Positions 13,418 through 64,000 of a stretch of DNA of 64,000 nucleotides are shown here, one piece after another. The notes below the pieces were generated by a model. It did no database searches, was not told where the DNA came from, and saw only the letters and a list, made by a program, of their open reading frames with translations. The DNA is from Chlorokybus atmophyticus (taxonomy: Eukaryota; Plantae; Mesostigma and Chlorokybus algae). The position numbers and the translations under genes were made by a program. Position 1 is the first letter of the stretch. Each line of letters opens with the position of its first letter. The stretch is taken from positions 372,001 through 436,000 of the forward strand of contig RHPI01002119.1 in NCBI GenBank assembly GCA_009103225.1, written 5' to 3'.

Positions 13418-15499
13418 ATGAATCCTCTGACGCAGATCAAGAACACTCAGAAGATCACTGCTCGTGAGGTGGAGGCGGGGCTTGGGGACGACAGCTCTTG
13501 GCACGCCAAGTACAAGGACTCCGCCTACGTCTATGTGGGCGGCCTGCCCTTCTCCCTCACTGAAGGCGACCTCTTGGCCGTCTTCGCTCAGTAAGGATTG
13601 CGTTGAATAGCTCTTGTGCGTAGCGTCGCTGCTTGTTGCTGAGCTGGCACGCAGTTTCACCTTGCTTAGCTAGCATGTTTTATCGACGCTTACTTGGGTT
13701 GAATGATTTTCTGCTTGTTAAGGTACTTTAAAAAGTTGCTGGTGATAACTATCGTATGTAACATGCAATATTTGTTTGTTACGCGAACTTGCTTGGTATG
13801 TGTGGTTGTCTTTTGCCATGATGAAGGTGCTGTCTATGCGTGCATTGGCTGCACCTACACCTAAATTAGCTGACAACCCAAAGTTTTGTTCAGCTCTTTA
13901 TCTGTGGGTGAGCTCCCTTCTTAACAGACGCCAGCGTCAACTCTCGCTCTTACTCGTTATGTCATTATTGTGCCCTACATCACGTGTGCACACGCCCATC
14001 CGAGTACCGTATTATAGTGCTTCCATTAGTCTCAAAGTAACTGATGGTTTTCCTGCTCTAAAATGTACCTGCCTGTGATAATGCGTGCTAAGTCATTGGG
14101 CTGGACATATGTTGCATAAAGGTCGTAGCGAAGCATGGCGGTACTGTGTAGAGTTTGTGCTGTGCACAACAACATTGACTCACCTTGTATGCGCGCAATA
14201 CAGGTATGGCGAGATTATGGACGTCAATTTGGTGAAAGATCCCGACACTGGCAAGAGCAAAGGCTTTGCTTTCCTGGCTTACGAAGACCAGCGATCAACT
14301 GTCCTGTCTGTTGGTAAGCTACCCAAACGCATGCTGCTACATTGTCACAGATTGAGGGAAACATACACAGTCCCAGATCAGTGACAGAAGTTGCATCATG
14401 TGCGCTGCCATATGGATGATGTCCTCAATAGTCAGGTACTGACATGTTCAATTGCGAAATTGCAGACAACTTGAATGGTGCCAAGGTTGCCGGCCGCATT
14501 GTGAAGGTGGACCATGTGGCAAAGTACAAGCGCAAGCTTGAAGAGGACCCCGAAGAGAAGGAGAAGGCGCGAGAAGAGAGGGGAGTGTGCTACGCGTTTC
14601 AGCGTGGCGAGTGCAAGCGCGGCTCAGCTTGCAAGTTCTCGCACGACCTTGAGGTCAGGGCATCAAGTCAACGTGCTGCATGACATGAGCGGTATTATAG
14701 ACTTGTAATTTGGTTAGTTTTAAAGTGGCTACATGAGTGTGGTCATTTCTTGCAGCGCCATGCGAATACTGGCTGGGGACGGCCGGAAGACAAAGACGGA
14801 GAGCGCTGGAAGAATGACCGGTACGATGGCCCTGAGAGGTCGCGTGATCGGGGTGGGCCCTCAGGCGCTAATGCTCAACCAGTTGTGGCACGGCGACCTG
14901 TCTCTAATGACCCACAACCTGTGCCATCTTCTTCAGGTGAGGCTAGGCTAGTGCAATCTCATCCCACTGTTTTAGCAGTGAAAGTATTATGGCATCGCAT
15001 CCACTGGGCGTCTAACAACACATCTTTATCTAAGCAAGCAATCTGCATGCGTCGCACATGTTGCTGACTTCATACATAATTGCATGACCTTAGCAACACG
15101 CCTCTTGCCGCAGGTGCGCTTCCGTGGGAAGGAGGAGTGTTTTCTATCCTCAGCTCAGGTAGCAAAGCCGCAGAAGCGAAGCGAGAGAAGCGCAAGGCCG
15201 GGCACGGTGCTGAGCCGAGCAGCAGCAGATCCAAGAGCGATGATAGGGAAGGCACCAATGGAGTACATAAAAGCAGCAGAGACCAAGACAGAGACAGGGA
15301 AAGAGACAGCAACGGAGACAGAGACAGGGACAGAGACAGGAACGGAGACAGAGACAGAGACAGGGTCAGAGATAGCGGCAGAGGCAGGGATAGGGATAGA
15401 GATAGAAGTAGGGATGATACCAGGCAGGAAGATAGAGAGGGGAGAAGCGATCGGGGACAGTCTGATAGAGGCAGGGACCAGGATAGAAGGAGAACTTGA
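13418..15499 (+). CDS. RBMX2: RBMX2/Snu17 (RES complex) RRM protein with CCCH finger and RD/RE-rich tail
   Basis: MNPLTQIKNTQKI...SWHAKYKDSAYVYVGGLPFSLTEGDLLAVFAQ|YGEIMDVNLVKD..GKSKGFAFLAYEDQRST, CYAFQRGECKRGSACKFSH. Confidence 0.95.
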
Positions 15500-16273
15500 G
15501 AGCCGCAAGTGTTGGATGATGGAAGGTGTTATGGATGCGGCCAATGTAGGTTGTGTACTTGGTCCGACATGTCCTGACAGGATTGCTTCCCTCCTGCACA
15601 ACTGTGTACCGAGGTTAATGTAGCCAACGAGTTTGTATCGTGGATGCCAAACAAACATGTGGTCTCGTGTAATGGCCTGCTCAGGCAACCCTGCCAGCAC
15701 TAAGTAAACAGGAGTTCAAATGTTCAATCCACCTGTTGTGGTCTACATTGCAGCAGTTAAGCAAGCCAGTCTGTCGCTCAACATATGCTGATTCACAGCT
15801 ACAGGCAAGTGACCTGTGTATATAAGGGGTATGGTACGGTGTGTACAAAGCGCTTGCTTCTGAAGCCGAGTCCGTGTGCAAATAGCATTCAACTCTTCTA
15901 AACTATGTCATCCTGCAGCAGAGGCATTGCTCGCAGAGCTGCGTTAACAGCAACTGTTCATGCAATCTCAGTGCAGCCCGCAACTGACCTCATCTGAAGA
16001 CCAAGGCAGCATCTGTGACAAGCGCAAGGCCTGCTAAGAAGGTCAGATCCATATGGCTTGACACAAGTGCTGCAAGCTGCAGCCCGCTCCTAGCAACAAG
16101 TCCGCCCAAACTTGACCAGAATGTAGGGTGGGTGCTAACAAGTGCACCATTGATGCATACAGCTACGACTTGTTGCACATCGTCAGAATACTTGAGTAAC
16201 ATTATACAGCATACCCCTTACCTACGCACGTATGTACAGGCAACTATACTTTGCAATTATACAAAGCATAACT

Positions 16274-18087
16274 TCAATCATGAGACGTTCGCAACAGCTT
16301 AAGGTCATCATCATCAGCATGTATCTGCGGTTTGGCCTCGTCCCACGGCCCGTTTATCTGGTGCTTATACTTCTGTATGCGTATAAGCCAGAAGGGGCAG
16401 ACGAAAGTCACAAACGCGATGACGACCGCGTAAAGAGTAGTCAGCAGCTGACTCAAAGGCAGCAAAAGCACAGCTGTCCCGATGGCCATTACCGAAGATA
16501 TGACCAGATGCAGAGTGGGCGAGACACACTTGATGTGATGGCAAAGAATGGGGAAAAGGATGAACAGCTCCAGCGAAAAGAGTATCAACGCGAACACGTG
16601 GCGGTGAGACGGGAGTCGCGAAGCCATCAGCACCGAAGCAACAATCGCGGCATTGAGGGACACATTGCCAGTGAGGCGTGCAGTGACGGTGTTGGCGTAG
16701 CTGTAGTCATAAAGGAAGAGATGAAGCAGCAGTAAGCAGATGGTTGTGGCCCAGATGGTGTCGGAGCTGATGGTGCTGGTGAGTGTTTGGAGTATAGGTG
16801 ACAACACGTACACCCCGCACACGAAGAGCGTGCACTGAAGGGCGTTACGTTGGAGCGCGTGCGAGGGGAGAGGCCTCTTGGTCAGAGTAAGGCGCAGGAT
16901 GAAGCCAATAGTGAGGAATGCTGCATCCAGCGCGAGGAGAGACTTGGCCAGCACAGACTCCATCAGCGTGTACGTGCACATCACCGCCAGCAGCACCACC
17001 GTGCTGATCTGCTGCGACACGGCCGTGGAGTCCCTGACCTGTGCGTGCAGAGATTGTAGACTTGAAATTGGGTGAATGCACACATGCACACATGCAGCTT
17101 CGCTGTACGTGCTGCTGCTATGCATGGCAGGAAGCAATCCCTCTAAATACCCTGTTTGCGCCATGCCATGCAAAGGGCCCTTCCTAAATGAAAGCAGCTT
17201 GGCTGCTTGCTTGCTGCCAAGTTTGTTAGGGCCATGCATGTGTGTGCATGCATGCATGCAATTATCACTATCACTTAATCACGAGTTCATGGCCATGTAT
17301 GCACTAACCTGCGCAATGTGGCTTTAAGTCCGTTCAGGAGGCAAACACAAGAATAAACGCATATCACCCGCGCGTAATGGTACACACTTCAGCAAGCGTG
17401 TTGCACACAATGCATGCATGCATGTAGCCAAACCTTTGTTATTTGGAAGACGCGAACAAGAGCATAGCTCTGCTGCTTACTGAATGCATACCAACTTGCA
17501 ATGCAATATCCTTCGGAAGCCCCTCTCCTTTGATTGAACACACTTATGACGCACAACACGCACTTCGCAGTCGCACAACCACCTCACACGCACTGAAATC
17601 AACCCACTTATACGTAGTATAGACCAACATCATGTAGCTGCGTGCCCTATCTGTATGTTCAGTAGCTCTTTGATGTATGTACTGCATTGTGTTGTTGATC
17701 AATGTATGCACTTGGGCACCGCAATAAACGCTGCATGCTCACCACAGTCCAGTAGTCGTGGGTCCTCACGTCAGCATTAAACACCATGGAGGCAAGGAAC
17801 GACTCGTCGGTGTGGTTGTCGCCATAAGGCTGCCGGGCCCACAGCACCTTGCGCCATGGCACCGCTGGGGTGGCGGTGGTGGCGCCATCGCCCGACGCCG
17901 ACGCCGAGGAGGACGACGCCGCCGACGTCCCCAAGGACCTTGTCCTGATGGGCCGGAGACGCCTCGGGCTGGGACTCTCGGCGCTCGGGACGGGGGAGGA
18001 CGGTAACGTGGTGTCGGCGGCGGCGGCGGTGGGGGAACCGCTGGCCGCCGCCACCCCTACCGCCGCCGCTGCCGACGCCGTTGGCAT
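16274..18087 (-). CDS. PIGC: Phosphatidylinositol N-acetylglucosaminyltransferase subunit C (GPI2); 2 exons, intron 17039-17742
   Basis: WRKVLWARQPYGDNHTDESFL, LSPILQTLTSTISSDTIWA, SLNAAIVASVLMASRL, KYKHQINGPWDEA. Confidence 0.95.
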
Positions 18088-26571: not shown

Positions 26572-26653
26572 GCAGTCGTGTCCGAGTGGTTAAGGAGATT
26601 GACTAGAAATCAATTGGGATCTTCCCGCGCAGGTTCGAGTCCTGCCGACTGCG
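26572..26653 (+). tRNA. tRNA-Ser(AGA)
   Basis: Acceptor stem GCAGTCG/CGACTGC, D arm TCCGAGTGGTTAAGGAG, anticodon arm ATTGA-CTAGAAA-TCAAT, long variable arm, T loop GGTTCGAGTCC. Confidence 0.96.
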
Positions 26654-26738
26654 CTTACGATTGCAGACAATTCTTTTGCTCTCTGGAATGTCCTAGACCA
26701 AATGTGCTAACTTAAAAATGCACATGCAAGCTTTGGCC

Positions 26739-49664: not shown

Positions 49665-50182
49665 ATGATGGGGGGCTTCAACTCTCAGGAGGACATGGTG
49701 GGTGTACATTTTCTCAGCGACGTGATGCATATGTGTTAGTTACTTGGGTGATTGTTACTCACGCAGTAAGCAACAGGTTACACATGTGTGATTCAAGTCT
49801 CACAACTCCACTTGGCTAGCTTCTTCACATGCATGCAGGTGGCCAGCTTCAAGGCGTTCCTGAAGAGGGAAGAGAACAGAGAGATCGTTGCTGAGCACAC
49901 CCGACAAGGTGCCAACGCATGTGCTTGACTTGTGTTGGAATGATGCTGCACACGTGATGCAAGAGAAGGTCATATCTCCTTGCAGAGGTGGACGAGTGGT
50001 TCAAGTTGGATCGGCAGATCCGCGTGGCGGATTTTGACGAGCGCTTCAAGGCCCTCGACAAACGCACACAAGCGCAACTCATGGTAACGCTCGTGAATGT
50101 GTATAAACGAACGCATGAGCATGCCCCATGAAAACATTGTGTGCACGCACTATCACATGGTTGCCTGCATACACATGCCAGT

Positions 50183-50228
<46 letters not shown>

Positions 50229-52396
50229 TAGACTACACACATGCGTGCACCCACGCACTGGACCACCCACATGCACACATGTTCACACGCACGCCAACGC
50301 GACACAATCTCCGTGCAGCCCTACATGAAGTACAAGTGTCTTCACCCTGTCCTTCTGAGTTTCTGCAACGACAGAGACGCCGACTTCAACAAGTGCGGTT
50401 CCGCATCGCATCGTTGCCCGCGCGGGCCGAGAACGCGACACGTCATTGTTCGTATGTGATGACCACACAGGTGGGCGGAGAACGGGAAGGTGATGGGACT
50501 GCTGGCGACGCTGAAGAGACAGCTGGATGAAGGCAAGGTCACGGTATGAAGGCTGTGCGCACGCGTGTGGGTGGGTGTGGGTGTGGGTGTGGGCACGCAA
50601 ATCTGTGTTGCGCGTGCATGTGTGTATGCTTGCGCGTGTGTCTTGTCCGTCGTATCCATTCTTTCAACTAGACTTGACCTGGCATTGACACACATGCACA
50701 TACGCACAGGAAGAGGAGGTGTTGAGACGGATGCGGGCAATACTGAGCGACCCCACGCAGGAGCACCACCGAGAGTATCTGTTGGTACCCACATGCCAGC
50801 TGCATCTTGGTAGTCATCATCATCGGGACTCCATATCTATGGGTCATGATGTTCACCCCATAGATTGCAGTAGCACGCACTCAACATGAGTTGGTCATGA
50901 TGTTCTCAATAAATCAACTTTGCTGCCAGGAGTCCAGACAGAAGGTGCGCGTGACGACCGAGTACCTCATTCAAGCCCTCAACGAGCAGGTTCTCCGCTT
51001 CATGTGCGCACGTTTGCTTGCGCATGTGCATATATATCGTGTGTGTTCGCTGCTTAGAGTCCCACAAAGTGCATAAAGCACCGCACAGCCTCGTTGCATG
51101 GCTAACCCACTCAAACTGATACATTCTGTCGTACTCTGTTACTGACTCTGATTCCCCCCACCGTTTGTTCACTCGTGACCCGATCGCAGCTTGAGCTGAG
51201 GGCGGCTGGAAACAAGCTGTACGCTGCAAGAAGGTTTGACGAGGCCCTGGAGAAATACATTAAGGTGGGTGGGTGTGAGTTGACATGGCTGGTGAGTGTT
51301 CATGTTGTCGTGCATGCATATGCGTACGTACATGTGTACGTGCAAGCGGGTGTGTATATGCGCATGTGAACGGGCACTAACACTTGCACGTGGATGTGAT
51401 GACCTTCCTGTTGATGCGGGTGGGCGCATACGTTTACTGTTCAATGTGTGTGTGCTTCACCTCAGGCGCTCGTTGTTATGAACTTTGTGGAAGCCGGCAG
51501 CACAATGGAGCAGACAGGTGAGCGTGCGACATCACACCTTGTCATCGTAACAACAACAACAACAACAACGACGACGATGACAACGTGGTCGTATGCTTCC
51601 TGCAGAAGTGGACAACAACAAAGTGATCTGCTTGCTCAACATAGCTGCTGGTACGCACACATGCGAGTATGACACATCTAACTGATCTCTGTCTCATGGT
51701 GTGGTTATGTCCAGTGTCCATATGCATGCACGCTGATATCAGCATGTTCATCACCTTCCCCACCTGCAGTTGGGATCGAGAAGAAAGAGTTTGGCAGCGC
51801 CATATCACACTGCACACAGGTGATGATGACGCAACAACCACAAACATAGTATCACTGTGATGGTAGTATGGAAAAACAACCACACACGGTCAGTCCAAAC
51901 ATAAACAGCCTACTGATGGTTTGAATGCTGGGCTTGTCGTTCAGGCGCTTCAAGTGCAGCCGCACAGCGCGAAGTCTCTCCTGCGCCGGGCCAAAGCGTA
52001 CGTCAGTCGCGGAGACTACAAGGCAAGCAACCACAACAACAATGTTGTGAGTGCATCATGTTGCTGATGAGCGACAGTCACGTGACTGGGGCGTGCTGCA
52101 GGAGGCGCGGGCGGACTTGGAGAAGGTTCTAGAGTTGGACCCTGGCGACTGGACTGCCAAGGAGGAGCTGCAGCGACTGGTATGGTTTTGTTACTGATGG
52201 TTGTTTTCCTGTCGGGTTGGGTTGGGTGATTTTGTGCGTGCATTTGCGTGCATGCGCGTCTGTCCATGCACATGTGCGTGTGCGCGTGTGTGCATATTGT
52301 GATTGCCATGTACTGCAGGGCAAGGCGAGGCAGCAGAGTAAAGGCAGAGACATGCAGCTGTACGCCAACATGCTGCAAGTGTCTTCATCGGAGTAG
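49665..52396 (+). CDS. Three-TPR co-chaperone-like protein (FKBP/Cyp40-type TPR clamp) with an unrecognised N-terminal domain; ~12 exons
   Basis: LRAAGNKLYAARRFDEALEKYIKAL, CLLNIAAVGIEKKEFGSAISHCTQAL, KSLLRRAKAY..DYKEARADLEKVLELDP, MQLYANM. The exon phases I checked are consistent. Confidence 0.82.
50185..50226. repeat. (AC)21 microsatellite in an intron
   Basis: Read directly. Confidence 0.95.
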
Positions 52397-52599
52397 CTGC
52401 GTACATGCATATAGGTGATGGAGTAGTCAATATGACAGTTGCCACTAATACTAGCAGCTGAGACAACCCAAATACGTTGTCATTGTGGTCACATGAATGA
52501 CATTGAGCCGATACAGCTCATGACGTGCTGTTTATTCAAGTAGTGGATGCAGCAACTCAAATGGCCAACTCTTGCACCTGGATGAAATACCTGCGGTGG

Positions 52600-54450
52600 C
52601 TTCGGCATGGGTCAAACTGCACCAGCGCAGCGTGTATCCCGCATATCTTGCTTATCATCAACGGGTTGGCTTTGAGTGGGGCATACATGTTGTTATGGTT
52701 CTGTATCGTGCGTGTGTTATCTCGGGAAAGGGGCGCTCGCAGCCGCGGGATGCAAGCATTTGTGTGAGCTCAGCACAGTGTATCTAGATGAGAACCTACT
52801 ACTCAGCTCTGTCATTAATGTTTTGCGTGTCACACGCAACCATGCTAGGTGCAAGTTCGTGGTGGCTAGTTTGGATCTGATGCAAGTATTGCTTGTACGC
52901 CCTGTACGGCCATGTCGATACTGATGGCTCCGTGGAAAGACGTCATTTGAGACTTCGTTGCGCGCGCCTCGTTCACTTGAAAACACACTCAGATGGCGGA
53001 GAGCTTTGAGCCCCTGCAAAAGCAGTTGCCATTCAATGTGAGGCCAAGAGCATGGCAATGGTGCAAGCACTTTGAGACTTGCCAAGACTTGCCCTCATCA
53101 ACAACTTGTATTGCATCGCAAATGCTTTTGGTGATGGCTCGCGCGATGCTGTGAGGATGATCCGGTACCAGCACCTTTCTAGCCTGCATTATCGGCATCG
53201 TAATGGCTATGGATATTGCAATTGTCTCCACACCGTTTCTAACGACAAAGGCAAGCATGCATAGTGACCCCCTCCTAGACTTTCTCAATGCACCGCTGTA
53301 TACCCTTGCCTTGTCTAATGCCTTGACTCATTATGTAACTACCATTGCTCCCATTTTCACGGTCAACGATCTCTTCCTCTTCAGAACCCTCGTGGCTGCC
53401 TTGGCGGTGCGAAAGGATGTGTCAGCGAGGTTAGTTGATGGGTCCATCCACAGCGCTTTCATACGTTCGGCTCATGTTTCGACGCTGATGGCATTGTTGA
53501 AGATTTTATGTCCACCATCCGTCACAAATCATTGCGAGCGATTCGCTTGACATCTACCGTGCGTTCAACTTCTTTGTTGTCCGCGATAGGGGATATCCCC
53601 AATTTTGTATATACATAAATGGCATTACTCGTTTAGTGCCCTGAAGCGAAAGTGTCTTATTGGGTGTTTACGGTGGACCCCTCCGCTTTTTGTAATTTAC
53701 AGGTATGTGCATTCAACACAGTTATCCAGCAACTTGTTAAAATCCGATTAATGTTTTGGCGACGTTGCGCGTGTGCGAGAGCGGCTATCGTTGCCGGGAT
53801 GATTGCACATGAGGCGTAAGTGCGTGCTGTATCAATTTGGATTGCCTGCCACATTCAATAGGCTAACACTAAAAGCTTTGCTGCTTTAATTGACGCATTT
53901 GATGCACAATGTGGTGATCAACACCTCCGTCTTCAATATGATAAGCAATGCCCCCTTGCTTTGCAACACAAAAGAGTGCAACACGCAATTACATCCGACG
54001 TACTGATGCCTTGATAGTGTTTTGCGCATGTCCAAATGAAGCCACTTTAGCAGCGTTATACATAAGATGGCTTACTTCGTTCAGATTATGAAAATGCAGC
54101 CTTCTGAAGTGAGTTTCAAGTACATGACATTGCTTCGCTACAATTAGCAGCTATCAATGGTGTTAAGCATGCATGGTGGCTTTGCCGTTTCATTTCATCT
54201 TGCACATTCTATATTGTTTTTTTGTGTTGCAAAACGCTTTTACGCCAGTCCTCGTTCCTTGAAATTTTCATTTTACACTGCTCTTCGCAATATGGTAATT
54301 GCAAATGAATTTGGATTCCATGTGTGACGCAATGAGGTGTATTGTATTTCTTGTGAGGTGCGTTACCTTGTTGACCGGGATCATCTCTGCCTCACACCAA
54401 ACATAAGCCACTATCTTCAAGTGCATGCGGCTTTTAGCTCGGCAGGATGG
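52600..54450 (-). mobile_element. Heavily decayed hAT-superfamily transposase
   Basis: Colinear motif remnants across broken frames: RSNVMYLKLTSEGCIF, HIEDGGVDHHIV, DTFAS, LCMLAFVV, SFHGAISIDMA, SRGCERPF (52721-52750, dimerisation-domain GCER motif). No TIRs found. Confidence 0.55.
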
Positions 54451-54517
54451 CAGTACGGGCGCTAAAAATGAGAAGTGTCCAAGAAGTATTAATGATATTG
54501 CAACTTAAGAGACAAGT

Positions 54518-55089
54518 TGTACACCCTACCCCTCAAGACCTTTAACTTAATATTGCCCTTTCATGACTTGCACGATAATTGTGTGAGCGCGTTCTCATCA
54601 TCAAGGGTGGAATGCTCTCCACATCGTGATGTTGGGCTTCATTTCTACGTAATATAGCCTGATGCATTGCAACGTAAGCGGCGCCGTTGCCAAAGGGCAA
54701 CAATGGCCATGTACAGTAAATGCAAATGACATATGTGTGCAATCGCGGGCTTGCACCACAATCGGCTACGGAGGATCCTACAATCACGTTGTTTGAAAGT
54801 ACGATGCTCGTGGCGTGAGGCTTGCATGCTGGGTTCACGCGATAGTGCCAGTAGTTGCTTGGATGACAGTCACTGTTGTATGTACACATATATGTTGCTT
54901 GCAGGCACTGACACTAATGTGGTGTGGAGCTAGGTATTTTCCTAAACTCTAGCTATACTTGGAACAATGTCGCTCTTCCATGTGCTGCTTCATGTTAGTG
55001 TCTAGAGTCGCATGTGGTCGTACTTGCTGTGAGTACCCGCAGGCAAAGCGCCCGAACCCTCACCTCGATTGTCGGAGTATATCAAGCCA
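54518..55089 (+). repeat. Putative 5' LTR of the Gypsy element
   Basis: Ends in CA immediately before the PBS. The TG start at 54518 is a guess because the partner LTR is not in the window. Confidence 0.35.
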
Positions 55090-55101
55090 TGGCGACCACA
55101 G
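55090..55101 (+). promoter_or_regulatory. Putative primer-binding site (tRNA-Arg(UCG) 3' end)
   Basis: TGGCGACCACAG is complementary to the plant tRNA-Arg(UCG) 3' end (...CTGTGGTCGCCA) as I recall it. Confidence 0.55.
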
Positions 55102-56649
55102 CGTCCAATTGCCCAATGGCTTCTGACTCATTGCAATTCCTACTTGCGTAGGTGAGGCGCCGTTGTTGCTGCTCCTTTCTGCTTTATTGTCCAAGCTGCA
55201 GAAGGGCCCAGCTAGCTGTTGTGCATTGCTTGCCTGTTGCTGCTGCTATCCAACGATAATTGCTGCTTGTTGCCCTACGCTACACGCACACATTGCCTTG
55301 GGTCCAATTGTGTGCGGATGAGCCACTTCAACTGACGGTCAGTCCATAAGTCTTACCTATGTATATGTGGTCTGCGATCCCACACTCAGTGCGTGACAGG
55401 CTGTCACGCTCATCTTCTGACAGCTATGCCACACTAACATACAATCTGCTTCAAGTCTCTTGCATACATGGATGCTTATGTATCAGGCATGCCAGCGCAC
55501 ATAGCTGGGTTGCTATGCGTGTGGACATTAATGATATAGTTGGCTTGTGTTGGGTTGTTTTTATGTGTAGCGCTACGGGTTTGGCACTAATCTGATGACC
55601 TGCAACATGTCAAATATAATGCACGTTATGCGTGTTGTGGCATTATGTTTCTGCATGTGCTTATGGTTTGCAGATTGTAGTTACTGGTTTGCAATAGGTG
55701 CCACACTGTTGTTGATAATAGAGAGCGTACAAACTATGCAATGCGGTGCATGTGACCATGCGTACACATGGTCACATGCCGTGGTGTGGACAAGTATCAC
55801 AACAATTGCAGGATATTGTGGGGCTTGTGCATTGTCATGCCTCTCGCCCAAGCATGCCAGTCATCATCGGGCATGCCTACAGCGAGACCCTCGCCCGGCT
55901 TACCAGCATGGCAACCCGCGCGCGTCTCTGACCAGTAGCTAGGTCATGTCTCTAGAGTAGCTCATGACCATAGCCTACATAGGCACCGCGCGTAGCTGTT
56001 CAGTTGTGAGTTCAGTTATAAGTCAGGTTCTATATCGAGTGGTAATGTCCTGTGGAAATTAGCCTCGATATGACCGTTAGCTTATGTTCTGGACAGTCAT
56101 GAGTTGACTTATATAAGTAGGCACAGTGTTCACCAGATCAGCTGGTGACACTGTAAGTGAGAAAGCTAAGAGCTTGTGAAGCGACTTGAACTACGAAACA
56201 CACCGTCCTGGTTCCCAAGAATCCCCTCACCGTGTGAGAGTTTGTGCATGTTCTTGTGCACTGTGCTTGTCCTCGCTGTGAGCTTTGTGTACTTGGTTGC
56301 GGTGTGCTTGTTGGCATCAGTCAGGGCATAGCATCCACGTGTTGCTTGCTCATTCACCTCACTTAACAGTGTGATTTCTCTTCCACTCACGCAAAGAACT
56401 GTGTAAACAGCACTACCTATCATAGTGGCTTGTTGACTTACAGTGTCACCCTCTTTGCTCAAGTGAGTGTAGTTGCAGGCTGTACATCAGCATCGCAATC
56501 TGTAGTTGTACACATCACAGTGCAGTGTTGTCACCGTCATCGCATAGCGCGCACAAGCGCTAGTGTGTTGGGTGATAGCAGCACTGGAGATCCCATTGTA
56601 GAGCACAAACACTCTACCCTTCATCCACTTTCACCATCGCATCAGCTGT

Positions 56650-59343
56650 ATGAGCAGGCCCACCCCTTTCTCGCCAATAGAAGAAGGGGACCTCAACAGC
56701 TGGAGCCCAACCTCCAACCTTACCTACGAGCGCGCAAGTGAAGGGAGCGATTACCGTAGCAGCAGAGGCTCACGCCCCGTCTCCGGCTTCACCTCCTCTC
56801 ACTCCACTCCTCGTCAACGAGCATCTCCACCACCGTCGGACAGTGACGACGAAGAGATGGAGCCTTCCAGCTCAACCAACTCCCTACGCTTCTCCGGACG
56901 CCCTGGCACCACCTCACTTGACGAGTTCATCATCAAGTTCCACTCCAAGATGCGGCAGCAAGCCCTCAAGAGCAAGGACTGGACAGACGAGGTATCGTTT
57001 CATGTGTCCGCCCAATACCTTGATCACGAAGCACATGATGTGTGGAAGTCCGTCGCTGAGTTGCACAAGATTGATGGCTATGGCAAGTTGGCCAGCACAA
57101 TAGCCGCCACGTCACTGCACAGCCCATCGGTTACGGTCCCTGTAGCAGCGGCCCCGCCCGCCTCAGTCACGGGTCTCACTCTAGCTGCAGTCATGGAGAA
57201 GGCAGAGAATGAAGAGGTTGAGGTGGTAGTGGCCGCATTGATTCCTGCAGAGATCGAAAGCAAGAAGGCCGAGCGCCGGATCAGAATACTCAACCGCACC
57301 GCTGCCATCATTAGGGAGCAACAAGAGGAGCAGCAAGCTGCAGCATTGGAGATGGGTACGCCCCTGCTACCAACACCGAACTCGCGTGCTCCAGCGGGAG
57401 CCAGTGTTTTCACCCTCGGCTCAGTGGCATTGCGTGCACCCGCGCTTACAGTGGGCGCGGCCATGTCGGACTCCCCGTTGAAGGACCTCTACGCCGCACT
57501 TCGGCGCACCTTCCCACCTCAAACCAACAGCAAGGTGGAGGAGTTGAGGCGTTTTCGACGGAAGCCCCACGAGGACCCTTCCCGACTGTATTCACGGTTG
57601 GAAGGGTTGCTTAAAGACACTGACTACAAGATCGTTAGTGAGGAGGCGGCAGCAGTGGTGTATGTGGCCGAGTTGGATCCCACCCTGAGAAAGTCAACGC
57701 GCCTGACGCTGAACTACAGCAGGCCCCTCGGCTACACCCTCAAGGAAGCTTTCGAGACTGCACAAGCCATCCTTAAGCGTGCAGTGTATGAGAAAGCGGT
57801 GCTGGACACCAACCGCAGTGCCTCACGGCCTATGGCAGGCACAAGTGCGGAGCCTCTTCGGCGGGACCGCAGCCGCGAGCCGCAAGGCATCCATTACAAG
57901 GATAAACGGTCAGCTCATGCTGCCCTTGTGGCTCCAGTGCTGTGCCACCGGTGTGGTCGACATGGCCACTACTAAAAAGAGTGCACCGAAGATTATGGCA
58001 ACCTTGTGTGCGACCACTGCCACAAGACGGGACTTTTGGAGACAGTATGCTGGCTCAAGTTCCCTGAGCTGCGGCCCTCTATTGGCTACAACAACGACAA
58101 CAACGCTGTTGGCTACCGCGGCAACAACAACAACAACGGGGGCTACAACAACAGCAACCACGCTGGCGGCTACAACAACAGCAACAACGCTGGTGGCCAC
58201 AACCCCAACAACAACAATAACCCTGGCGCCCGCAAGGAAAAAGCTGGCTATAGAGGGAAAAACCGCCCTCCACAGCACAAAGGACTTGAGGGACGTCCTC
58301 GCGCTAGAGCTGCTGCTGTAAAGGCACCAACCAATCCACCGGCTATTGACCAAGTGGCAGCTCTGATGGCGCGCGTGGCACAGCTGGAGGAGAACAAGGA
58401 GCAGGACTATCAAGCCTGCTATGCTGCTAGGTGGGCACTGATGGCACCGAAACGGGATAGGGACACTCCCACGCCGTCACGCGTACAACCATCCAGACGT
58501 GCGCGCAGGGAAGCTGGCGCGTCGTCAACAGCGGCATCGTCGGACGCCACAAGTGGCGCTGCCTCGGCAGCCACAACCATTGCTGGGACGACGCCGTCGA
58601 CGACACCGTCGGCATCCACACCGACCACGACAGCAGGTGTCAGCACTCTTGGCACCACGCTGTCCCCGGTGATAGAGAGCACCCACGCCGCAACAACCAT
58701 GGTCATTGCATTCGTAAGTGGTGAATCCACCACTCCTGCCTCCATCGAAGCGACCACATCAACCGCAACTGCTGCCACCCTCACAGCCGCCACCTCAGTA
58801 ACGACGACTGCTGCAGGTGCCACCACCATCGCCTCCAGTAGTGCTGCCATACCCACTGCACCACTTCCTGAGGGACGAACGGCACCGCCACCAGCGTTGG
58901 ACGTCACACAGCAAGTGCCACGCGGGCCACAAGCAGAGCGCGCTTGGGTGTCGGTTCTACGCAACGTGGAACCCACCACCATTGCGTACGGACCAGAGGG
59001 GCAACGCACCACGCGCGTGGCACGCGATGATCGCATCTTGCCCCTACCACCACCAGAGTACCACACGCTGCCGGAACCCACACAACAACAGCTGGAGGAT
59101 GAAATCCTCGCCGGCACTGCACCAGAGATGAGGGATCGTCTGTTCGGGGTCACCTACCGACGACCTGCGGTATTGGAGCTGGCCATCCAGTTGTTCCTGG
59201 CGTTACACGCACGATTGCAGGGCGCACCCAGTCAAACGCAGCAACCCATGCCCGCTCAACAGATCGACTTCAAGCCCTCACCACTGGACCCACTCGGCCT
59301 CCAGCGGCACAAAAATGCAAGACCTCGTGGTCACCATGTCTGA
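56650..59343 (+). pseudogene. gag with zinc knuckles and an N/G- and T/A-rich extension (premature TAA at 57973)
   Basis: ORFs 56650-57975 and 58006-59343 are in the same frame. Knuckles: CHRCGRHGHY*KEC (CX2CX4HX4C) and CDHCHKTGLLETVC (His replaced by Leu). Confidence 0.8.
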
Positions 59344-59750
59344 CATCGCGCTGGGCGCTGATCCCATCTCCGGGGGCTCACTCCAGGCAGTCGTCAAGAG
59401 CGTTTCTCTGCACTCAAACAAGCCCATCGTTATCGAATGGACCAAGCTGCCCAAGTGGACGCGCGCCGACAAGCGTACGAAGCAGCACACACCGTTATCG
59501 GACCTGAGCGCCAGCAAATGTCGCCAGCGCCTCTACGGCGCTGACCACAGCGTACTCCACGGCAATCGCCATCGAGCAGCCAGGACACGCAACTGTTGCA
59601 GACCAAGCGAGGGCGTTGGCGCAACAATTGAGGGGGGTAATCGCCCCGCTGCTGCCTCCTTTGGTCGAAGACATGCCTTAAGATCAACGCGACGCAGGGC
59701 GAGGGTACTATACCCCGCAAGGGGACACCACACAGCGAGGAGGAGCTGGT

Positions 59751-61145
59751 ATGGTGGGGGAGCAACAACTCCGTACCGCACTCATCCGGCAAGCAGTCAT
59801 GTTGCACAGGCCTGAGGGCAACACATTAAGACAGATGATGGGGATGCAAGAGGGCAGCGCCGCTCGAGCCCGTCTCGTGACATGGCTCGTTGCCAATCAC
59901 CCTGCTGTCCCCCTGTTTGCCTTTGGCAACCGAGCGTCATGGTTGGGGGCATTCGTTCGTTCGCTGCGACAAGCATACGACGAGGCTGCCACCACAGCCC
60001 CGGACACGCTGAAGGGAGTGCAAGAGGCAATGCTGTGGCTGCCAGGGGTGGAAGCCGCACGGCAACGGCGGCGCATCGCCATTGCTCATGAGCTACACGC
60101 ACAGCAGACTGACCTCCAGCGCACCCTACGTGCTCGCGCCATGACCGTGCTTGATGTGGGAGTGGTACAAGGAAGGTGGGATGCCTACATCATGATGGCA
60201 GGGATCTTGCGAGTCCCCACCATCACTCACGACATGCGGCGACAGCTACTACGCGCCGTATACCTGCAGCCCATGCCTCAATATCATCATTGGACCGACA
60301 CGGACACCGAGCCCACGGCCACGTGGGAAGGGACATTGGTCAGAGAAGCGGCTCATGCTGTTCGATGGACGTACGCCGCGGAGCAAGCTGAACACGAGGC
60401 AGGCCCACAAACACCGGGTCCGCCGGGGTTTCCTCCACAGCCATTGGGTACACCCGCGGGCATGATTCCAGCTTCGCAGAGGCGTCATCCACCTGCGCCG
60501 CCACCACAACCAGCGCCGGAACCTCCAGCACCGAGGCCCCCCCGTGTCTACCAACCACCACGACAAGGTCGGTTCGGCAGAGGGAGAGGGCAAGGAGGGG
60601 GTTCTCCGGACCCAGCAGGCACAGGAGCTCTGGCTGCCATGCGCTCAGCACCGCCAGCTGAGACAACTGAGTCAGAGGTACAGACACCTCGTATGAAGAG
60701 GCTGCGTATCGACGCCAATGCTGCCATGGTGGCCAACCGAGGCAAGCACGATACCATCAACGGTCTGGCACCCAAGCGAGTAATGTTGGACACCGGAGCA
60801 CAGCCTGTCATCATCGGGCGCTTCCTTGCGCGGTCCCTAGGCATAACCAGCTCCGACTTGGTGCCGTGCCCGTACGTGTTGGACACTGCCACAGGTAGCC
60901 GAGATAAGGTGATGGGAGTCACCAGGGAGGCCTTTTGCATTCGGTTGACAGGGCTGGACCCAACCCACACAACCGAGATCGTCCAGCAATGTATGGTCAC
61001 CAATGCCGGCTCCTTCGACTTTCTGCTTGGGCAGGACTTCAACTTCCCTGTGGGCATGGGCCTCGACTGCTGGATAGAGCGAGCGTGGTTTCGGCCATAT
61101 TGGGATGAGGATGACGGAGAGGTACAGGGTTTCCTGCCTCTCTAG
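59751..61145 (+). pseudogene. Unknown domain plus retroviral-type aspartic protease
   Basis: RVMLDTGAQPVIIG (DTG at 60789-60797) and FDFLLGQDF. Confidence 0.8.
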
Positions 61146-62465
61146 TTGGTCTCGCGCACGCGCGCCCAACGCAAAATGGTTGCCATGGCCACACGCAGCC
61201 ACGCCCGCACCCGGAAGGCTGTAATGGCCACATACGACGGCACTCGGACGCAAGTCGCTGCTGGTGCCACGGCCCCGTGTCGAACCGGCGACTCCTCTCC
61301 CATCCCGTACAACGAGGAGCAGGAGGATGCCACCGTGAAAGTAGCATTACAAGACCCAGCTGAACGGCGCTGGCGCGCACAGGTGGACGCACACATCTTG
61401 CTCAGCCATCCCCTGATCACCACGCGCTTCCCCAACTACCGAAGCCACGTCAAGGTGCAGGACCGCCATATGGTGGCCACCGGAGTGGTGAAGTTCCACA
61501 CCTTTCGCAGGCAACAGGGCATCACAGTGTTGGAGCTGTTTGGAGGCATTGGCAGTGGTCTTGCTGCGGTCCTCAACACAGGCGTGAAGACTGTCAAATA
61601 CTATTATTGCGACCCAGACCCACACGCGCAAACGATCCTCAAACACCACTTACGCCAACTGCACGCCAGGTATCCACGTCAACTACCCCTCTCGGCGTTG
61701 CAAGGCAGCCTCAAAGCATTGCCACAGGACATCCGGCTGATCACTGAAGATCATCTACTGTCCCTTGGCAACGTCGACCTGTTAATAGCGGGATGGGAAT
61801 GTCAAGGGCACTCCAGGGCAGGCAAGGGGCAAGGCCTCGAAAACCCTCGCTCCGGGCAAATCTGGGAGCTGATGAGAATCATCCACCTCCTTCAACACCA
61901 CCAGATCTCCAGACCCCTGGGGTACGTCATCGAAAATGTGCATTCAGAGGACGACAAGCGTCCGCACGTGGTCTCCAGCTACCGACAAGTTTGCTCCATT
62001 CTGGGGCACCCACTCAAGGTGAACGCAACATGACATGGCTCGCGCGCACATCGTGTACGTGCCAAATGGACAAACTTGGCCACCGTGGAGGAACTCATGA
62101 CCGCCGAATACACACGCAGCGCTCGGCCGCGCAACCTGCTGGTCGACGACATCTTTGACCCCAGCCGCACACCACAACCTGTCCTGCGTCATGACCACAA
62201 CCACTTCTACCCGTGCAATCAGCCCGGTCAGCCCCGTCGCGCACTCCCAACATTGGTGTCCTACCCGGGCTCCTACGCATTTCGAAACGTTGGTGACGGG
62301 ATGGTGTTCGATGCGACCACCAACAGGCTGGAAGAACCCAACACACGCGAACGTGAACGCGCCATGGGATTCTTCCCCAACAGCATCACGGGCTCATCGC
62401 TGACGGACAGTTAGCAATGCCAGCTGCTTGGTCGCGCCATGGACCAAAACAGCATGGTATGGCTG
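61146..62465 (+). pseudogene. C5 cytosine DNA methyltransferase domain (DNMT3-like) in the pol frame, two premature stops
   Basis: Motif I VLELFGGIG (61527-61553), IV DLLIAGWECQGHS (Cys at 61800), VI YVIENV (61932), VIII AHRVRAKWTNL, IX RERERAMGF, X QLLGRAM. Confidence 0.9.
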
Positions 62466-62679
62466 CTGGAGCTGAGCTTCGCGTTGCAGGACCGCCACGT
62501 GTCCTTCGAAGATCTCGAACACTTGGCTGGGGGGTGGGCTGATCGCGTGGTCGACACCAAGGCAGCTCACACAGCCCTAGAGGTGATCCACATGGAGGAG
62601 CAAGCAGCGGTGACAGTGGAGGACATCCCTGTGGTTGCCAATGCAACCTCCTGGGACCATGCCATTGGCCCGTTGGCCA

Positions 62680-63052
62680 CAGAAGACACTCGCGAGAAGC
62701 TGGAGGCTCTCCTCAACAAATGGAGGAGCCAATACAGTTTCAATGTGAGGGAACTGGGTACATGCTCAGTGTAGCAGATGGACATCGAGCTGGTGGACAC
62801 TGAGCCGGTGTTCTGACGACAATGCAGGCTCTCCAAGTTGGAAGAAGACTTGGTGGAACAGAGATGTAAAGCGCTGCTGGATGCAGGCCTTATCGAAGAG
62901 TCCACATCGGACTTCGCAGCAGCAACCGTCATGCCACTGAAGAAGGATTCAGCCGGCAACTGGACAGAGCGACGCATGTGTGGCGACTATCGCCCTCTCA
63001 ACAACAAGACCAAGCAAGACCGGTACCCCATGCCCACAGCAGAGGGTATTTT
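62680..63052 (+). pseudogene. Gypsy reverse transcriptase N-terminus, truncated by an insertion
   Basis: LLDAGLIEESTSDFAAATVMPLKKD..WTERRMCGDYRPLNNKTKQDRYPMP. Confidence 0.92.
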
Positions 63053-63476
63053 TGTTGAGAGTATTCCTACATACGATCAGCATCGACCCTCCACACAGGA
63101 GTAGAAGGTCGTAAGGACGAGCACTAGGTCCGGACTTAGCAAGATGGCATCGTCGGACCAGACTCCGGACTCCAGACTGGAGCCTTACTAACTGCTTCGT
63201 ATCTCCGCGTATACTTACTCATATTGGGCGTGTAAGAGCTTGTAGGAAAGCTCTAGTTGTAAGGAAGACAACGCAGCTTAGAGCGCGTCAAAAGGCTGAG
63301 TATAGCTTACGCAGTGCTTGCAAACGTAGACGTGTGTGTAACTGGCTGGTATAAGAACCAGCGGACAACTTGTAATAGATGAATGTGATGTGACTTGTGT
63401 ATGCTCTGGTGGCGGTAGCTCTGTCTCTGTGCATCTATGCTTGCCTCAACTACATGTGCATGCTAGTCCTTCAACA
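63053..63476 (+). repeat. Copia 5' LTR (424 bp)
   Basis: 6-bp inverted termini TGTTGA/TCAACA, directly followed by the PBS. Confidence 0.88.
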
Positions 63477-63489
63477 GGTTATGGGCCCA
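63477..63489 (+). promoter_or_regulatory. Half-molecule tRNA-iMet primer-binding site
   Basis: GGTTATGGGCCCA is the internal tRNA-iMet PBS type known from Drosophila copia, yeast Ty5 and Volvox Osser. Confidence 0.85.
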
Positions 63490-63603
63490 CACTACGCTTG
63501 AGGAGTGTGAGACTAGCTTGTGTGCATAGTAGTTCTACACTACGGTAGCTTGTTGGTAGCAGAGCCTTGGGTGTCAACTGCAAGAAAGGCAGGCTCGACA
63601 GAA

Positions 63604-64000
63604 ATGGAGGCGACCTACGACAAGGGGCAGATTGCAAAGCTGGACACCGACAACTACAACACATGGTGCGTGGAGATGAAGGCCTTGCTCATCCACAAGA
63701 AGGTGTGGAAGTACGTTGATCCGAAGGCACCACCACCAACACCAGGAGCGAACACTGTGTGGTCAGAGCATTCAGCAGAAGCACACTCTTTGCTTGTGTT
63801 GAACAGCAAACCGCATCACTTTCCCATGCTCACTGCATGTGAAGATGGTAGACAAGCTTGGGAAAAGCTATCAGCCGTTTTCAGAGCCAAGAACAATGCC
63901 AGAAAGTTGCATCTACGCAAGCAGCTAAGCGCACTCAGGAAGGAGGCAACAGAACCCATCACAAAGTATGTTGCGCGCGCGAGAGAGCTGTGGGCGGACC
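63604..64000 (+). CDS. Copia gag (DUF4219/UBN2-like), partial and uninterrupted
   Basis: MEATYDKGQIAKLDTDNYNTWCVEMKALLIHKKVWKYV...AWEKLSAVF...LRKQLSALRK..EPITKYVARARELW. Confidence 0.9.
   Translation, partial: MEATYDKGQIAKLDTDNYNTWCVEMKALLIHKKVWKYVDPKAPPPTPGANTVWSEHSAEAHSLLVLNSKPHHFPMLTACEDGRQAWEKLSAVFRAKNNARKLHLRKQLSALRKEATEPITKYVARARELWAD

What the first reader, a model, noticed from the sequence alone, without database searches (positions are those of the whole stretch)
61146..62465. Gypsy retrotransposon carrying its own DNMT3-like cytosine methyltransferase inside pol
Seen: a C5-MTase domain with motifs I, IV, VI, VIII, IX and X sits in the same frame as the upstream protease and the downstream RT. 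Motif VIII (AHRVRAKWTNL) and motif X (QLLGRAM) parallel DNMT3A AHRARYFWGNL and RLLGRSW. The catalytic Cys is kept, but in GWECQ rather than the usual PC. Established: retrotransposon-borne DNMTs were reported in dinoflagellates and charophytes (de Mendoza et al. 2018, Nat Commun), so the class is known. Inference: this may be an uncatalogued family or host, and the enzyme would be released by the protease and could methylate the element's own cDNA.
Basis: partly seen in the sequence, partly recalled or inferred. Interest (0 to 1): 0.9.

Follow-up and report, generated by a model that had tools for sequence, protein, structure and literature searches.

The report
Dead Gypsy retrotransposon carrying DNMT3-like methyltransferase
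This is a broken, truncated copy of an algal Gypsy-type jumping gene that carries its own DNMT3-like DNA-methylating enzyme between its protease and reverse transcriptase; the kind has been known since 2018, but this copy is a very divergent member.

Summary
One reading frame on the + strand runs from an aspartic protease (60753-61040) through a C5 cytosine methyltransferase domain (about 61491-62520) into the first ~10 residues of reverse-transcriptase homology, ending at 63053.

- **Methyltransferase:** Pfam PF00145 hits above its cut-off. Profile and fold comparisons rank DNMT3A/B/C first, ahead of DRM, bacterial M.HhaI and DNMT2.
- **Part of the element:** Intact 2,000-2,400-residue polyproteins from metagenomes, and shorter Closterium proteins, align collinearly across protease, DNMT and RT. 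The DNMT is therefore not a captured host gene.
- **This copy is dead:** The pol frame has five stop codons, two of them inside the DNMT domain, and two invariant residues are lost. A stop sits inside the gag zinc knuckle. A nested Copia element cuts off RT, RNase H and integrase at 63053/63054.
- **"GWECQ" is a family trait, not decay:** Among 136 related domains the catalytic Cys is invariant. The residue before it is Glu in 88 and Pro in 41.
- **Novelty:** The class (Gypsy-DNMT3, Klebsormidium nitens) was published in 2018. This copy is at most about 50% identical to anything found, and its host is unidentified (not a land plant, apparently not Closterium).

Verdict: new member of a known kind. 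Self-methylation of the element's cDNA remains an inference.

The parts
56650..57975 (+). gag ORF, first part. It ends inside a CX2CX4HX4C zinc knuckle (57943-57984) that is interrupted by TAA at 57973.
   Evidence: The N-terminal part aligns with gag of relative P0004 (tblastn E 4e-5). No Pfam hit.
58006..59343 (+). Continuation of the gag frame (position mod 3 = 1). It holds a second Cys/His knuckle-like stretch, a Gly/Asn-rich repeat (58084-58221) and a Thr/Ala/Ser-rich low-complexity stretch.
   Evidence: No Pfam hit. The frame differs from pol, and all frames are closed between 59341 and about 59690.
59751..61142 (+). pol-frame ORF whose C-terminal part is the retroviral-type aspartic protease (60753-61040; LDTGA at 60786-60800).
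   Evidence: PF13650 E 9e-8 and PF13975 E 2e-5. It aligns with the protease of P0035, P0275, P0285 and P0012.
61143..61145 (+). In-frame TAG between the protease and the DNMT linker. The relatives read through here in one ORF.
61146..61490 (+). Linker between protease and methyltransferase, with no recognisable domain.
   Evidence: matches to relatives begin at about residue 115 of this piece.
61491..62520 (+). DNMT3-like C5 cytosine methyltransferase domain with motifs I to X in the standard order. It is broken by TGA 62031-62033 and TAG 62412-62414.
   Evidence: PF00145 at 36 bits. hhalign of pieces 2 and 3 to A1. 42 of 47 columns conserved at 90% or more are kept. AlphaFold model of 61491-62030 has pLDDT 93.5 and its best PDB matches are DNMT3A/B/C.
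62521..63053 (+). Pre-RT linker and the first residues of RT homology (YPMPTAEGIF, 63024-63053). Contains stops TAG 62772 and TGA 62814.
   Evidence: tblastn of P0035, P0275, P0279 and P0285 runs without a frame change to 63053 and stops there..
63054..64000 (+). Nested Copia-type element that truncates the Gypsy copy. It has an LTR-like stretch, a PBS-like TGGTAGCAGAGC at 63554-63565, and a gag starting at ATG 63604 that runs off the window.
   Evidence: PF14223 E 1e-18 and PF13961 E 4e-8. Sequence read. The PBS resemblance to tRNA-iMet is from memory.

Best explanation
The region is a dead, 3'-truncated copy of a Ty3/Gypsy-type retrotransposon of the 'Gypsy-DNMT3' kind.

In intact relatives, one gag-pol reading frame encodes a CCHC gag, an aspartic protease, a DNMT3-like C5 cytosine methyltransferase, reverse transcriptase, RNase H and integrase. 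The methyltransferase is therefore an integral pol domain that the element copies along with itself.

The most likely function in live elements is inferred, not shown. The domain would be made as part of Pol and either cut out by the protease or kept attached to RT. It would then methylate the newly made cDNA, or the DNA around the insertion site, so that the new copy enters the host genome already carrying the host's own CG-methyl mark.

The window's copy can do none of this:
- It has five nonsense codons in pol, two of them inside the methyltransferase.
- It has lost an invariant Asp and an invariant Arg.
- It has a nonsense codon in the gag zinc knuckle.
- A Copia insertion removed RT, RNase H and integrase.

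The unusual Glu-Cys in place of Pro-Cys at the catalytic loop is the majority state of the whole family. It is not a lesion of this copy.
For: **Same frame and domains**
-.

**Collinear homology with intact polyproteins**
- The alignment covers protease, DNMT and the start of RT without indels, up to 63053.
- P0285 aligns over 60627-63053 (E 2e-124). P0035 aligns over 61509-63053 (E 3e-85). P0004 aligns over 60771-62522 (E 5e-93). All.
- P0035 has zf-CCHC, Asp_protease, DNA_methylase, RVT_1, RT_RNaseH, Integrase_H2C2 and rve in that order.

**DNMT3 affinity**
- Profile of 38 related domains against PDB: DNMT3A 96 bits (E 1e-26), DNMT3B 88, DNMT3C 86, DRM 53, M.HhaI 42, DNMT2 30, and no DNMT1.
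- The AlphaFold model of P0035's domain has pLDDT 91.9, and its top 50 PDB matches are all DNMT3A/B/C with target-normalised TM 0.82-0.85.
- The window's own first piece models at pLDDT 93.5 with the same top matches.

**Family size**
- 1411 representative proteins at E<=1e-3 and 419 at E<=1e-10.

**Placement in the family**
- The window's domain falls in a clade (SH-aLRT 96) holding all 24 protease-DNMT(-RT) rows plus four rows with only the DNMT detected. The named members of that clade are Closterium spp..

**Catalytic loop**
- Cys is present in 136 of 136 domains. The preceding residue is E in 88 and P in 41, with at least 12 E/P switches on the tree.

**Decay**
-.

**Published class**
- PMC5890265 and bioRxiv 10.64898/2026.05.21.726589.
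Against: - No LTRs or other terminal repeats can be shown in the window, because the 3' end lies beyond the Copia insertion and the window edge. There is no second copy in the window.
- The order RT, RNase H, integrase that defines Gypsy is seen only in relatives, not in this copy.
- Enzymatic activity of any Gypsy-borne DNMT3 is unproven. KnitGypsy-Dnmt3 did not methylate DNA in yeast.
- The Pro before the catalytic Cys is described as invariant in active enzymes (PMC2965745).
- I could not build a tree that includes host DNMT1, CMT, DRM and DNMT3. The 'DNMT3-like' label therefore rests on ranked profile and fold matches.
Confidence: 0.82

Rival explanations
1. The retroelement DNMT domain is not an active DNA methyltransferase. 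It would be a regulatory or adaptor module, like DNMT3L or plant DRM3, that binds DNA or recruits and stimulates the host's own de novo methyltransferase. The reason is that the Pro of the catalytic Pro-Cys has been replaced by Glu.
For: - Glu replaces Pro in 88 of 136 related domains and in the window.
- PMC2965745 describes the Pro as invariant and predicts that OsDRM3, which has the Cys but lacks the Pro, is inactive.
- The K. nitens Gypsy DNMT gave no methylation in yeast.
Against: - The catalytic Cys is invariant in 136 of 136 domains. Motif I (FxGxG), motif VI (ENV), motif VIII (RxR) and motifs IX and X are also conserved. DRM3 and DNMT3L have lost several of these.
- Pro and Glu forms interchange at least 12 times within one tree, which suggests they are functionally equivalent.
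- The authors called the yeast result inconclusive, because human DNMT3B also failed in that assay.
Confidence: 0.12
2. The copy belongs to the already published KnitGypsy-Dnmt3 family, or the window comes from Klebsormidium itself. In that case nothing about family or host is new.
For: - Same class and same position in Pol of a Gypsy-type element.
- Window G+C is about 52% with CpG depletion, which fits a CG-methylating streptophyte alga.
- Intact relative L007 shows the DIRS-like split-repeat layout described for KnitGypsy-Dnmt3.
Against: - The window's intronless PIG-C gene has no close named homologue. The best match is 58% identical and comes from a metagenome; the best named match is 44%, from land plants. 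No K. nitens entry appears in the list.
- No DNMT relative above about 50% identity was found, although NCBI proteins are in the collection.
- The exact window ORFs are not on record.
Confidence: 0.1
3. The DNMT segment is a host DNMT3 gene or pseudogene that merely lies between unrelated retroelement fragments.
For: The copy is fragmentary and sits in a region with nested transposon insertions.
Against: - One frame without indels runs from protease through DNMT into RT.
- The same order and spacing occur in many intact single-ORF polyproteins.
- The DNMT tree groups the window with the protease-DNMT-RT elements.
- No host-type accessory domains are present.
Confidence: 0.02
4. The domain methylates RNA, single-stranded cDNA or RNA:DNA hybrids inside the particle, rather than double-stranded DNA.
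For: - Its position is immediately upstream of RT.
- The yeast DNA assay for the K. nitens domain was negative.
- The authors raise RNA methylation for the LINE-borne DNMTs.
Against: - The best matches are DNA enzymes, DNMT3A/B/C. DNMT2, the tRNA enzyme, scores far lower at 30 bits against 96.
- A full target-recognition region with conserved PTL and SYAFR blocks is present.
Confidence: 0.04

Closest known systems
KnitGypsy-Dnmt3 of Klebsormidium nitens (de Mendoza et al. 2018, PMC5890265)
   Same: A DNMT3-related, non-rearranged, intronless DNMT domain lies inside the Pol polyprotein of a Gypsy-type element in a green-lineage alga. The copies are silent and methylated. A relative of the window's element (L007) shows the same DIRS-like split repeats.
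   Different: Sequence identity to the published copies could not be measured. The window's host gene has no K. nitens match. The window's copy is dead and truncated. The paper's text does not give the domain order, so identity of architecture is unverified.
gag-protease-DNMT(-RT) proteins of Closterium spp. NIES-53/54/65/68 (e.g. GJP34393.1, CAI7911866.1), annotated only as hypothetical or unnamed
   Same: Same architecture, same GWECQ catalytic loop and same clade in the DNMT tree.
   Different: About 41% identity over the domain. They form a separate sub-clade from the window. In the papers I searched they are not described as Gypsy-DNMT3 elements.
Mammalian DNMT3A/3B/3C catalytic domains
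   Same: They are the best sequence-profile and fold matches. Motifs I-X are in the same order. Motif VIII (AHRxR..W.NL) and motif X (LLGR) are alike.
   Different: About 20% identity. Motif IV is GWECQ rather than GSPCN. The element's region between motifs VIII and IX is longer. There are no PWWP or ADD domains. The domain is embedded in a retroelement polyprotein.
RT-RNaseH-DNMT-integrase-PHD Gypsy elements (e.g. Monoraphidium neglectum MNEG_11595, many metagenome contigs)
   Same: Homologous DNMT domain (31-38% identity to P0035), mostly with the same Glu-Cys loop.
   Different: The DNMT lies after RNase H and before integrase. The polyprotein ends in a PHD finger and sometimes has a G-patch. 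These form the remainder of the tree, outside the window's clade.
SymbioDIRS-Dnmt3 of Symbiodinium (PMC5890265)
   Same: A DNMT3-type domain inside Pol of a retroelement. This is the only class with shown de novo CG methylation.
   Different: The backbone is DIRS, with a tyrosine recombinase and no aspartic protease or DDE integrase. The host is a dinoflagellate and the acquisition was independent.
EpiLTRs of Cymbomonas and Euglena (bioRxiv 10.64898/2026.05.21.726589)
   Same: LTR elements of algae and protists that carry a cytosine DNMT.
   Different: Their DNMT is sister to DNMT4, sits at the 3' end of pol, and is combined with a DAM adenine methylase and a chromodomain.

Membership tests
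C5 cytosine DNA methyltransferase (PF00145) | Significant profile match | tested here: met
   36.4 bits against a gathering cut-off of 22, E 5e-9, for 61146-62030. The remaining pieces match the family profile A1 at E 7e-41 and 1e-7.
C5 cytosine DNA methyltransferase (PF00145) | Motif I FxGxG, motif VI ENV, motif VIII RxR, motifs IX and X, in the order I to X | tested here: met
   Coordinates. 42 of 47 family-conserved columns are kept.
C5 cytosine DNA methyltransferase (PF00145) | Motif IV Pro-Cys catalytic dipeptide | tested here: not met
   The Cys is present, but the residue before it is Glu (GWECQ, 61791-61805). The same holds in 88 of 136 relatives. Pro is described as invariant in PMC2965745.
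C5 cytosine DNA methyltransferase (PF00145) | Uninterrupted coding sequence (able to make the enzyme) | tested here: not met
   TGA 62031 and TAG 62412 lie inside the domain. An invariant Asp has become Asn and an invariant Arg has become Gln.
DNMT3 subfamily | Closer to DNMT3 than to DNMT1, DRM, DNMT2 or bacterial enzymes | tested here: met
   Profile against PDB: DNMT3A 96 bits, DRM 53, HhaI 42, DNMT2 30, DNMT1 absent. The Foldseek top 50 are all DNMT3A/B/C.
DNMT3 subfamily | Placement inside the DNMT3 clade in a tree with reference eukaryotic and bacterial DNMT families | not tested
PDB chains are not retrievable as sequences.
Ty3/Gypsy LTR retrotransposon | gag with CCHC knuckle and pol with aspartic protease | tested here: met
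   The knuckle at 57943-57984 is broken by a stop. The protease hits PF13650 at E 9e-8.
Ty3/Gypsy LTR retrotransposon | pol order RT, RNase H, integrase | tested here: inconclusive
   In the window only the first ~10 residues of RT homology survive (up to 63053). The order is met in collinear relatives P0035 and P0285.
Ty3/Gypsy LTR retrotransposon | Terminal repeats and target-site duplication | not testable with these tools
   The 3' end lies beyond the Copia insertion and the window edge. No repeats were found in 50000-64000.
KnitGypsy-Dnmt3 (published family) | DNMT3-like domain inside Pol of a Gypsy-type element | tested here: met
KnitGypsy-Dnmt3 (published family) | Sequence kinship with the published K. 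nitens copies | not testable with these tools
   The K. nitens sequences are not in the paper's held supplements. They did not appear in the named searches.

The most novel reading that the evidence does not exclude
The window holds a relic of an undescribed, deeply divergent lineage of Gypsy-DNMT3 elements in a host not yet known to carry them. It belongs to a very large family, hundreds of 50%-identity clusters across streptophyte and chlorophyte algae, that I found undescribed in the papers searched. The hallmark of that family is a Glu-Cys rather than Pro-Cys catalytic loop. If Glu-Cys enzymes are active, they would overturn the view that the Pro is indispensable. They might also have altered substrate or sequence-context specificity.
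Probability: 0.25. Interest if true: 0.6.

Novelty: new member of a known kind. Interest (0 to 1): 0.4.

Why it matters
Retrotransposons that carry a de novo DNA methyltransferase invert the usual picture, in which methylation is the host's weapon against them. Only one Gypsy example, from Klebsormidium, has been described, and its enzyme has never been shown to work.

This copy is inert and adds little on its own. Chasing it showed three broader things:
- The same DNMT3-like module sits in at least two pol positions, in a family spanning Closterium, Monoraphidium and very many environmental contigs.
- Most members have Glu where every textbook C5-methyltransferase has Pro.
- Intact natural members are available for a direct activity test.

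Tried and rejected
**Searches and tests that led nowhere**
- **Pfam on pieces 2 and 3 of the domain and on gag:** no hits. The DNMT pieces were resolved by profile comparison.
- **phmmer of piece 2 against PDB:** only a chance hit.
- **Second copy or terminal repeats in the window:** none found.
- **Exact look-ups of window ORFs (gag, PIG-C):** not on record in public assemblies.
- **Close relatives in JGI metagenome contigs:** none.
- **Short-protein named search:** six hits, all at 46% identity or less.
- **IMG/VR viral contigs:** only distant phage-type C5-MTases (26-51% identity, mostly over partial stretches), so no sign of a viral source.
- **Excess CpG decay in the element:** CpG observed/expected is 0.8 in the element against 0.73 in the rest of the window. 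I dropped the idea. Some of the stops and lost residues are changes that C-to-T or G-to-A transitions could produce, but this is only suggestive.
- **Host identification:** the PIG-C tree places the window outside land plants on a long branch, and nothing more precise. Assembly accessions of some relatives (GCA_006365075.1, GCA_040399485.1) could not be turned into organism names.
- **dN/dS among intact relatives:** not attempted. They are 68-74% identical at the protein level, so synonymous sites would be saturated.

**Handling notes**
- The contig is not human.
- The only read-through of the broken gene used X at each stop, inside a script, for alignment.

Full report
**1. What is in the sequence**

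On the + strand, the frame with position mod 3 = 0 is open in long stretches from 59751 to 63101.
- ORF 59751-61142 contains a retroviral-type aspartic protease: PF13650 E 9e-8 and PF13975 E 2e-5, at 60753-61040, with LDTGA at 60786-60800.
- After TAG 61143, the piece 61146-62030 hits Pfam DNA_methylase (PF00145) at 36.4 bits against a curated cut-off of 22.
- Pfam does not see the next two pieces. Profile-profile comparison with an alignment of 38 related domains (A1) places 62034-62411 on profile columns 190-313 (probability 100%, E 7e-41). It places 62415-62771 on columns 317-346 (94%, E 1e-7).
- Motifs I, IV, VI, VIII, IX and X sit at the coordinates listed.

The methyltransferase domain proper is about 61491-62520. 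The first ~115 residues after the stop (61146-61490) are a linker.

**2. It is part of the element, not a captured bystander**

A full HMMER scan of 1.84 billion representative proteins with 61146-62030 gave 1411 hits at E<=1e-3 and 419 at E<=1e-10. Many of these are 1,000-3,600-residue polyproteins.
- P0035 is 2,188 aa, from an ENA metagenome contig. It has zf-CCHC, Asp_protease, DNA_methylase, RVT_1, RT_RNaseH, Integrase_H2C2 and rve in that order in a single ORF.
- tblastn of intact relatives against the window gives collinear, indel-free matches in one frame, from protease through DNMT to the start of RT. P0285 matches 60627-63053 (E 2e-124). P0035 matches 60696-61094 and 61509-63053. P0004 matches 60771-62522, and its gag also matches 56842-57075.
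- Every alignment that reaches RT ends at 63053 (YPMPTAEGIF).
- From 63054 a Copia-type element follows, with its gag at 63604 (PF14223 E 1e-18).

**3. DNMT3-like**

- The window piece alone finds DNMT3C, 3A and 3B first among PDB sequences, at E 2e-4.
- The family profile A1 separates the classes clearly: DNMT3A 96 bits (E 1e-26), DNMT3B 88, DNMT3C 86, plant DRM 53, M.HhaI 42, DNMT2 30, and no DNMT1 at E<=0.01.
- AlphaFold2 on A1 (target P0035:960-1330) gave pLDDT 91.9. Its 50 best Foldseek matches in the PDB are all DNMT3A/B/C, with TM normalised by target of 0.82-0.85.
- The window's own first piece (61491-62030, with alignment A2) models at pLDDT 93.5. Its 48 best matches are all DNMT3A/B/C.
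- The motif order is I to X, not rearranged as in DRM.

I could not build a tree with reference DNMT families, because no reference sequences were retrievable. 'DNMT3-like' therefore rests on these rankings.

**4. State of this copy**

- The pol frame carries TAG 61143, TGA 62031, TAG 62412, TAG 62772 and TGA 62814.
- I aligned the copy to A1 with X at the stops. It keeps 42 of 47 columns conserved at 90% or more, but has lost an invariant Asp (now Asn) and an invariant Arg (now Gln). The two internal stops replace a consensus Arg and a consensus Gln.
- gag lies in another frame (56650-59343). Its CX2CX4HX4C knuckle (57943-57984) is interrupted by TAA 57973.
- All frames are closed between 59341 and about 59690.
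- RT, RNase H and integrase are missing from the window.
- No terminal repeats and no second copy are present.

The copy is a relic.

**5. The Glu-Cys loop**

I first suspected decay, but this is the family norm.
- Among 136 near-full-length related domains, the Cys is present in all 136. The preceding residue is Glu in 88, Pro in 41, Ser in 3, Asp in 3 and Cys in 1. The tree needs at least 12 Glu/Pro switches.
- Intact 2,072-2,374-residue polyproteins (P0035, P0275, P0277, P0278, P0279; also P0285 and P0287) carry Glu-Cys.
- The literature treats the Pro as invariant and uses its absence to predict inactivity (PMC2965745).
- The K. nitens Gypsy DNMT gave no methylation in yeast, although the authors called this inconclusive.

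I rate 'active enzyme with a variant loop' as more likely than 'non-catalytic adaptor'. The Cys and the cofactor and catalytic motifs are conserved throughout. The question remains open and is directly testable with natural intact domains.

**6. Family structure and hosts**

I built a quick maximum-likelihood tree of 136 domains.
- All 24 protease-DNMT(-RT) rows fall in one clade (SH-aLRT 96, 29 rows), together with four rows in which only the DNMT was detected and the window. The window sits on a long branch (1.03). Its best identity is 45% (P0285), and its grouping with P0285 and P0287 is weakly supported.
- The named members of this clade are all Closterium spp..
- Nearly all rows outside this clade that retain an RT have the order RT, RNase H, DNMT, integrase, PHD finger. 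Monoraphidium neglectum is a named host.
- An intact relative with flanks (L007) shows the layout A, ORF, B, A, B of split direct repeats plus inverted copies. De Mendoza et al. describe this DIRS-like layout for KnitGypsy-Dnmt3.
- IMG/VR contigs hold only distant phage-type MTases.

**7. Host of the window**

- It is not human.
- An intronless PIG-C/GPI2 gene lies at 16277-17257 on the minus strand (PF06432 E 4e-67). Its best named homologues are land plants at about 44% identity, and its best overall match is 58%, from a metagenome.
- In a tree it lies outside embryophytes on a long branch.
- No Klebsormidium, Closterium or chlorophyte entry is close.
- CpG observed/expected is about 0.7 across the whole window, with TpG and CpA excess. 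This fits a genome with CG methylation.
- I could not name the host.

**8. Comparison with what is known**

The class was published in 2018 for Klebsormidium nitens: a DNMT3-related domain inside Pol of a Gypsy-type element, under purifying selection, with silent and methylated copies (PMC5890265). A 2026 preprint refers to it as streptophyte 'Gypsy-DNMT3'. In the held literature I found no description of the Closterium or chlorophyte elements, of the two architectures, or of the Glu-Cys loop.

The window therefore adds a divergent, dead member, probably in a new host, to a known kind.

**9. Mechanism**

- Shown: the domain order, the homology, the fold class and the decay of this copy.
- Inferred from the published discussion and from the position of the domain just upstream of RT: in live elements the enzyme is made within Pol and methylates the new cDNA or the insertion site.
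- Release by the protease is plausible but untested.

**10. Limits**

- Natural intact relatives can serve for assays instead.

Noticed in passing
63054-64000: A nested Copia-type element was inserted into the RT of the Gypsy copy. It has an LTR-like stretch, a PBS-like TGGTAGCAGAGC at 63554-63565, and a gag from ATG 63604 (PF14223, DUF4219) that runs off the window.
   Followed up: partly
16277-17257 (-): An intronless 327-aa ORF encodes PIG-C/GPI2 (PF06432, E 4e-67). The best named homologues are land plants at about 44% identity. A tree puts it outside embryophytes on a long branch, so the host is probably an alga not represented in the protein collections.
   Followed up: partly
26572-26654 (+): tRNA-Ser (anticodon AGA), the only tRNA in the window.
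   Followed up: no
whole window: CpG observed/expected is about 0.7 and TpG/CpA about 1.5 everywhere, not only in the transposons. This suggests genome-wide CG methylation in the host.
   Followed up: partly
57943-57984: The gag CX2CX4HX4C zinc knuckle is interrupted by a TAA at 57973. A second Cys/His knuckle-like stretch follows, as in relative P0004.
   Followed up: partly
58084-58221: Three imperfect copies of a 54-nt repeat encode Gly/Tyr/Asn-rich gag sequence. A long Thr/Ala/Ser-rich low-complexity stretch follows, up to about 58900.
   Followed up: no
L007:6595-17143: An intact 2,352-aa gag-PR-DNMT-RT-RH-INT relative is flanked by split direct repeats: A 7368-7910, ORF, B 15146-15442, A 15465-16007, B 16038-16334. 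Inverted copies lie at 16798-17143. This is the DIRS-like layout reported for KnitGypsy-Dnmt3.
   Followed up: partly
relatives P0003, P0020, P0022, P0309 and about 90 others: A second, larger group of Gypsy elements carries the homologous DNMT between RNase H and integrase and ends in a PHD finger, sometimes with a G-patch. Monoraphidium neglectum MNEG_11595 is a named example. I found no description of this group in the papers searched.
   Followed up: partly
55748-55779: A 32-nt near-perfect palindrome lies upstream of the element's gag. Its significance is unknown.
   Followed up: no
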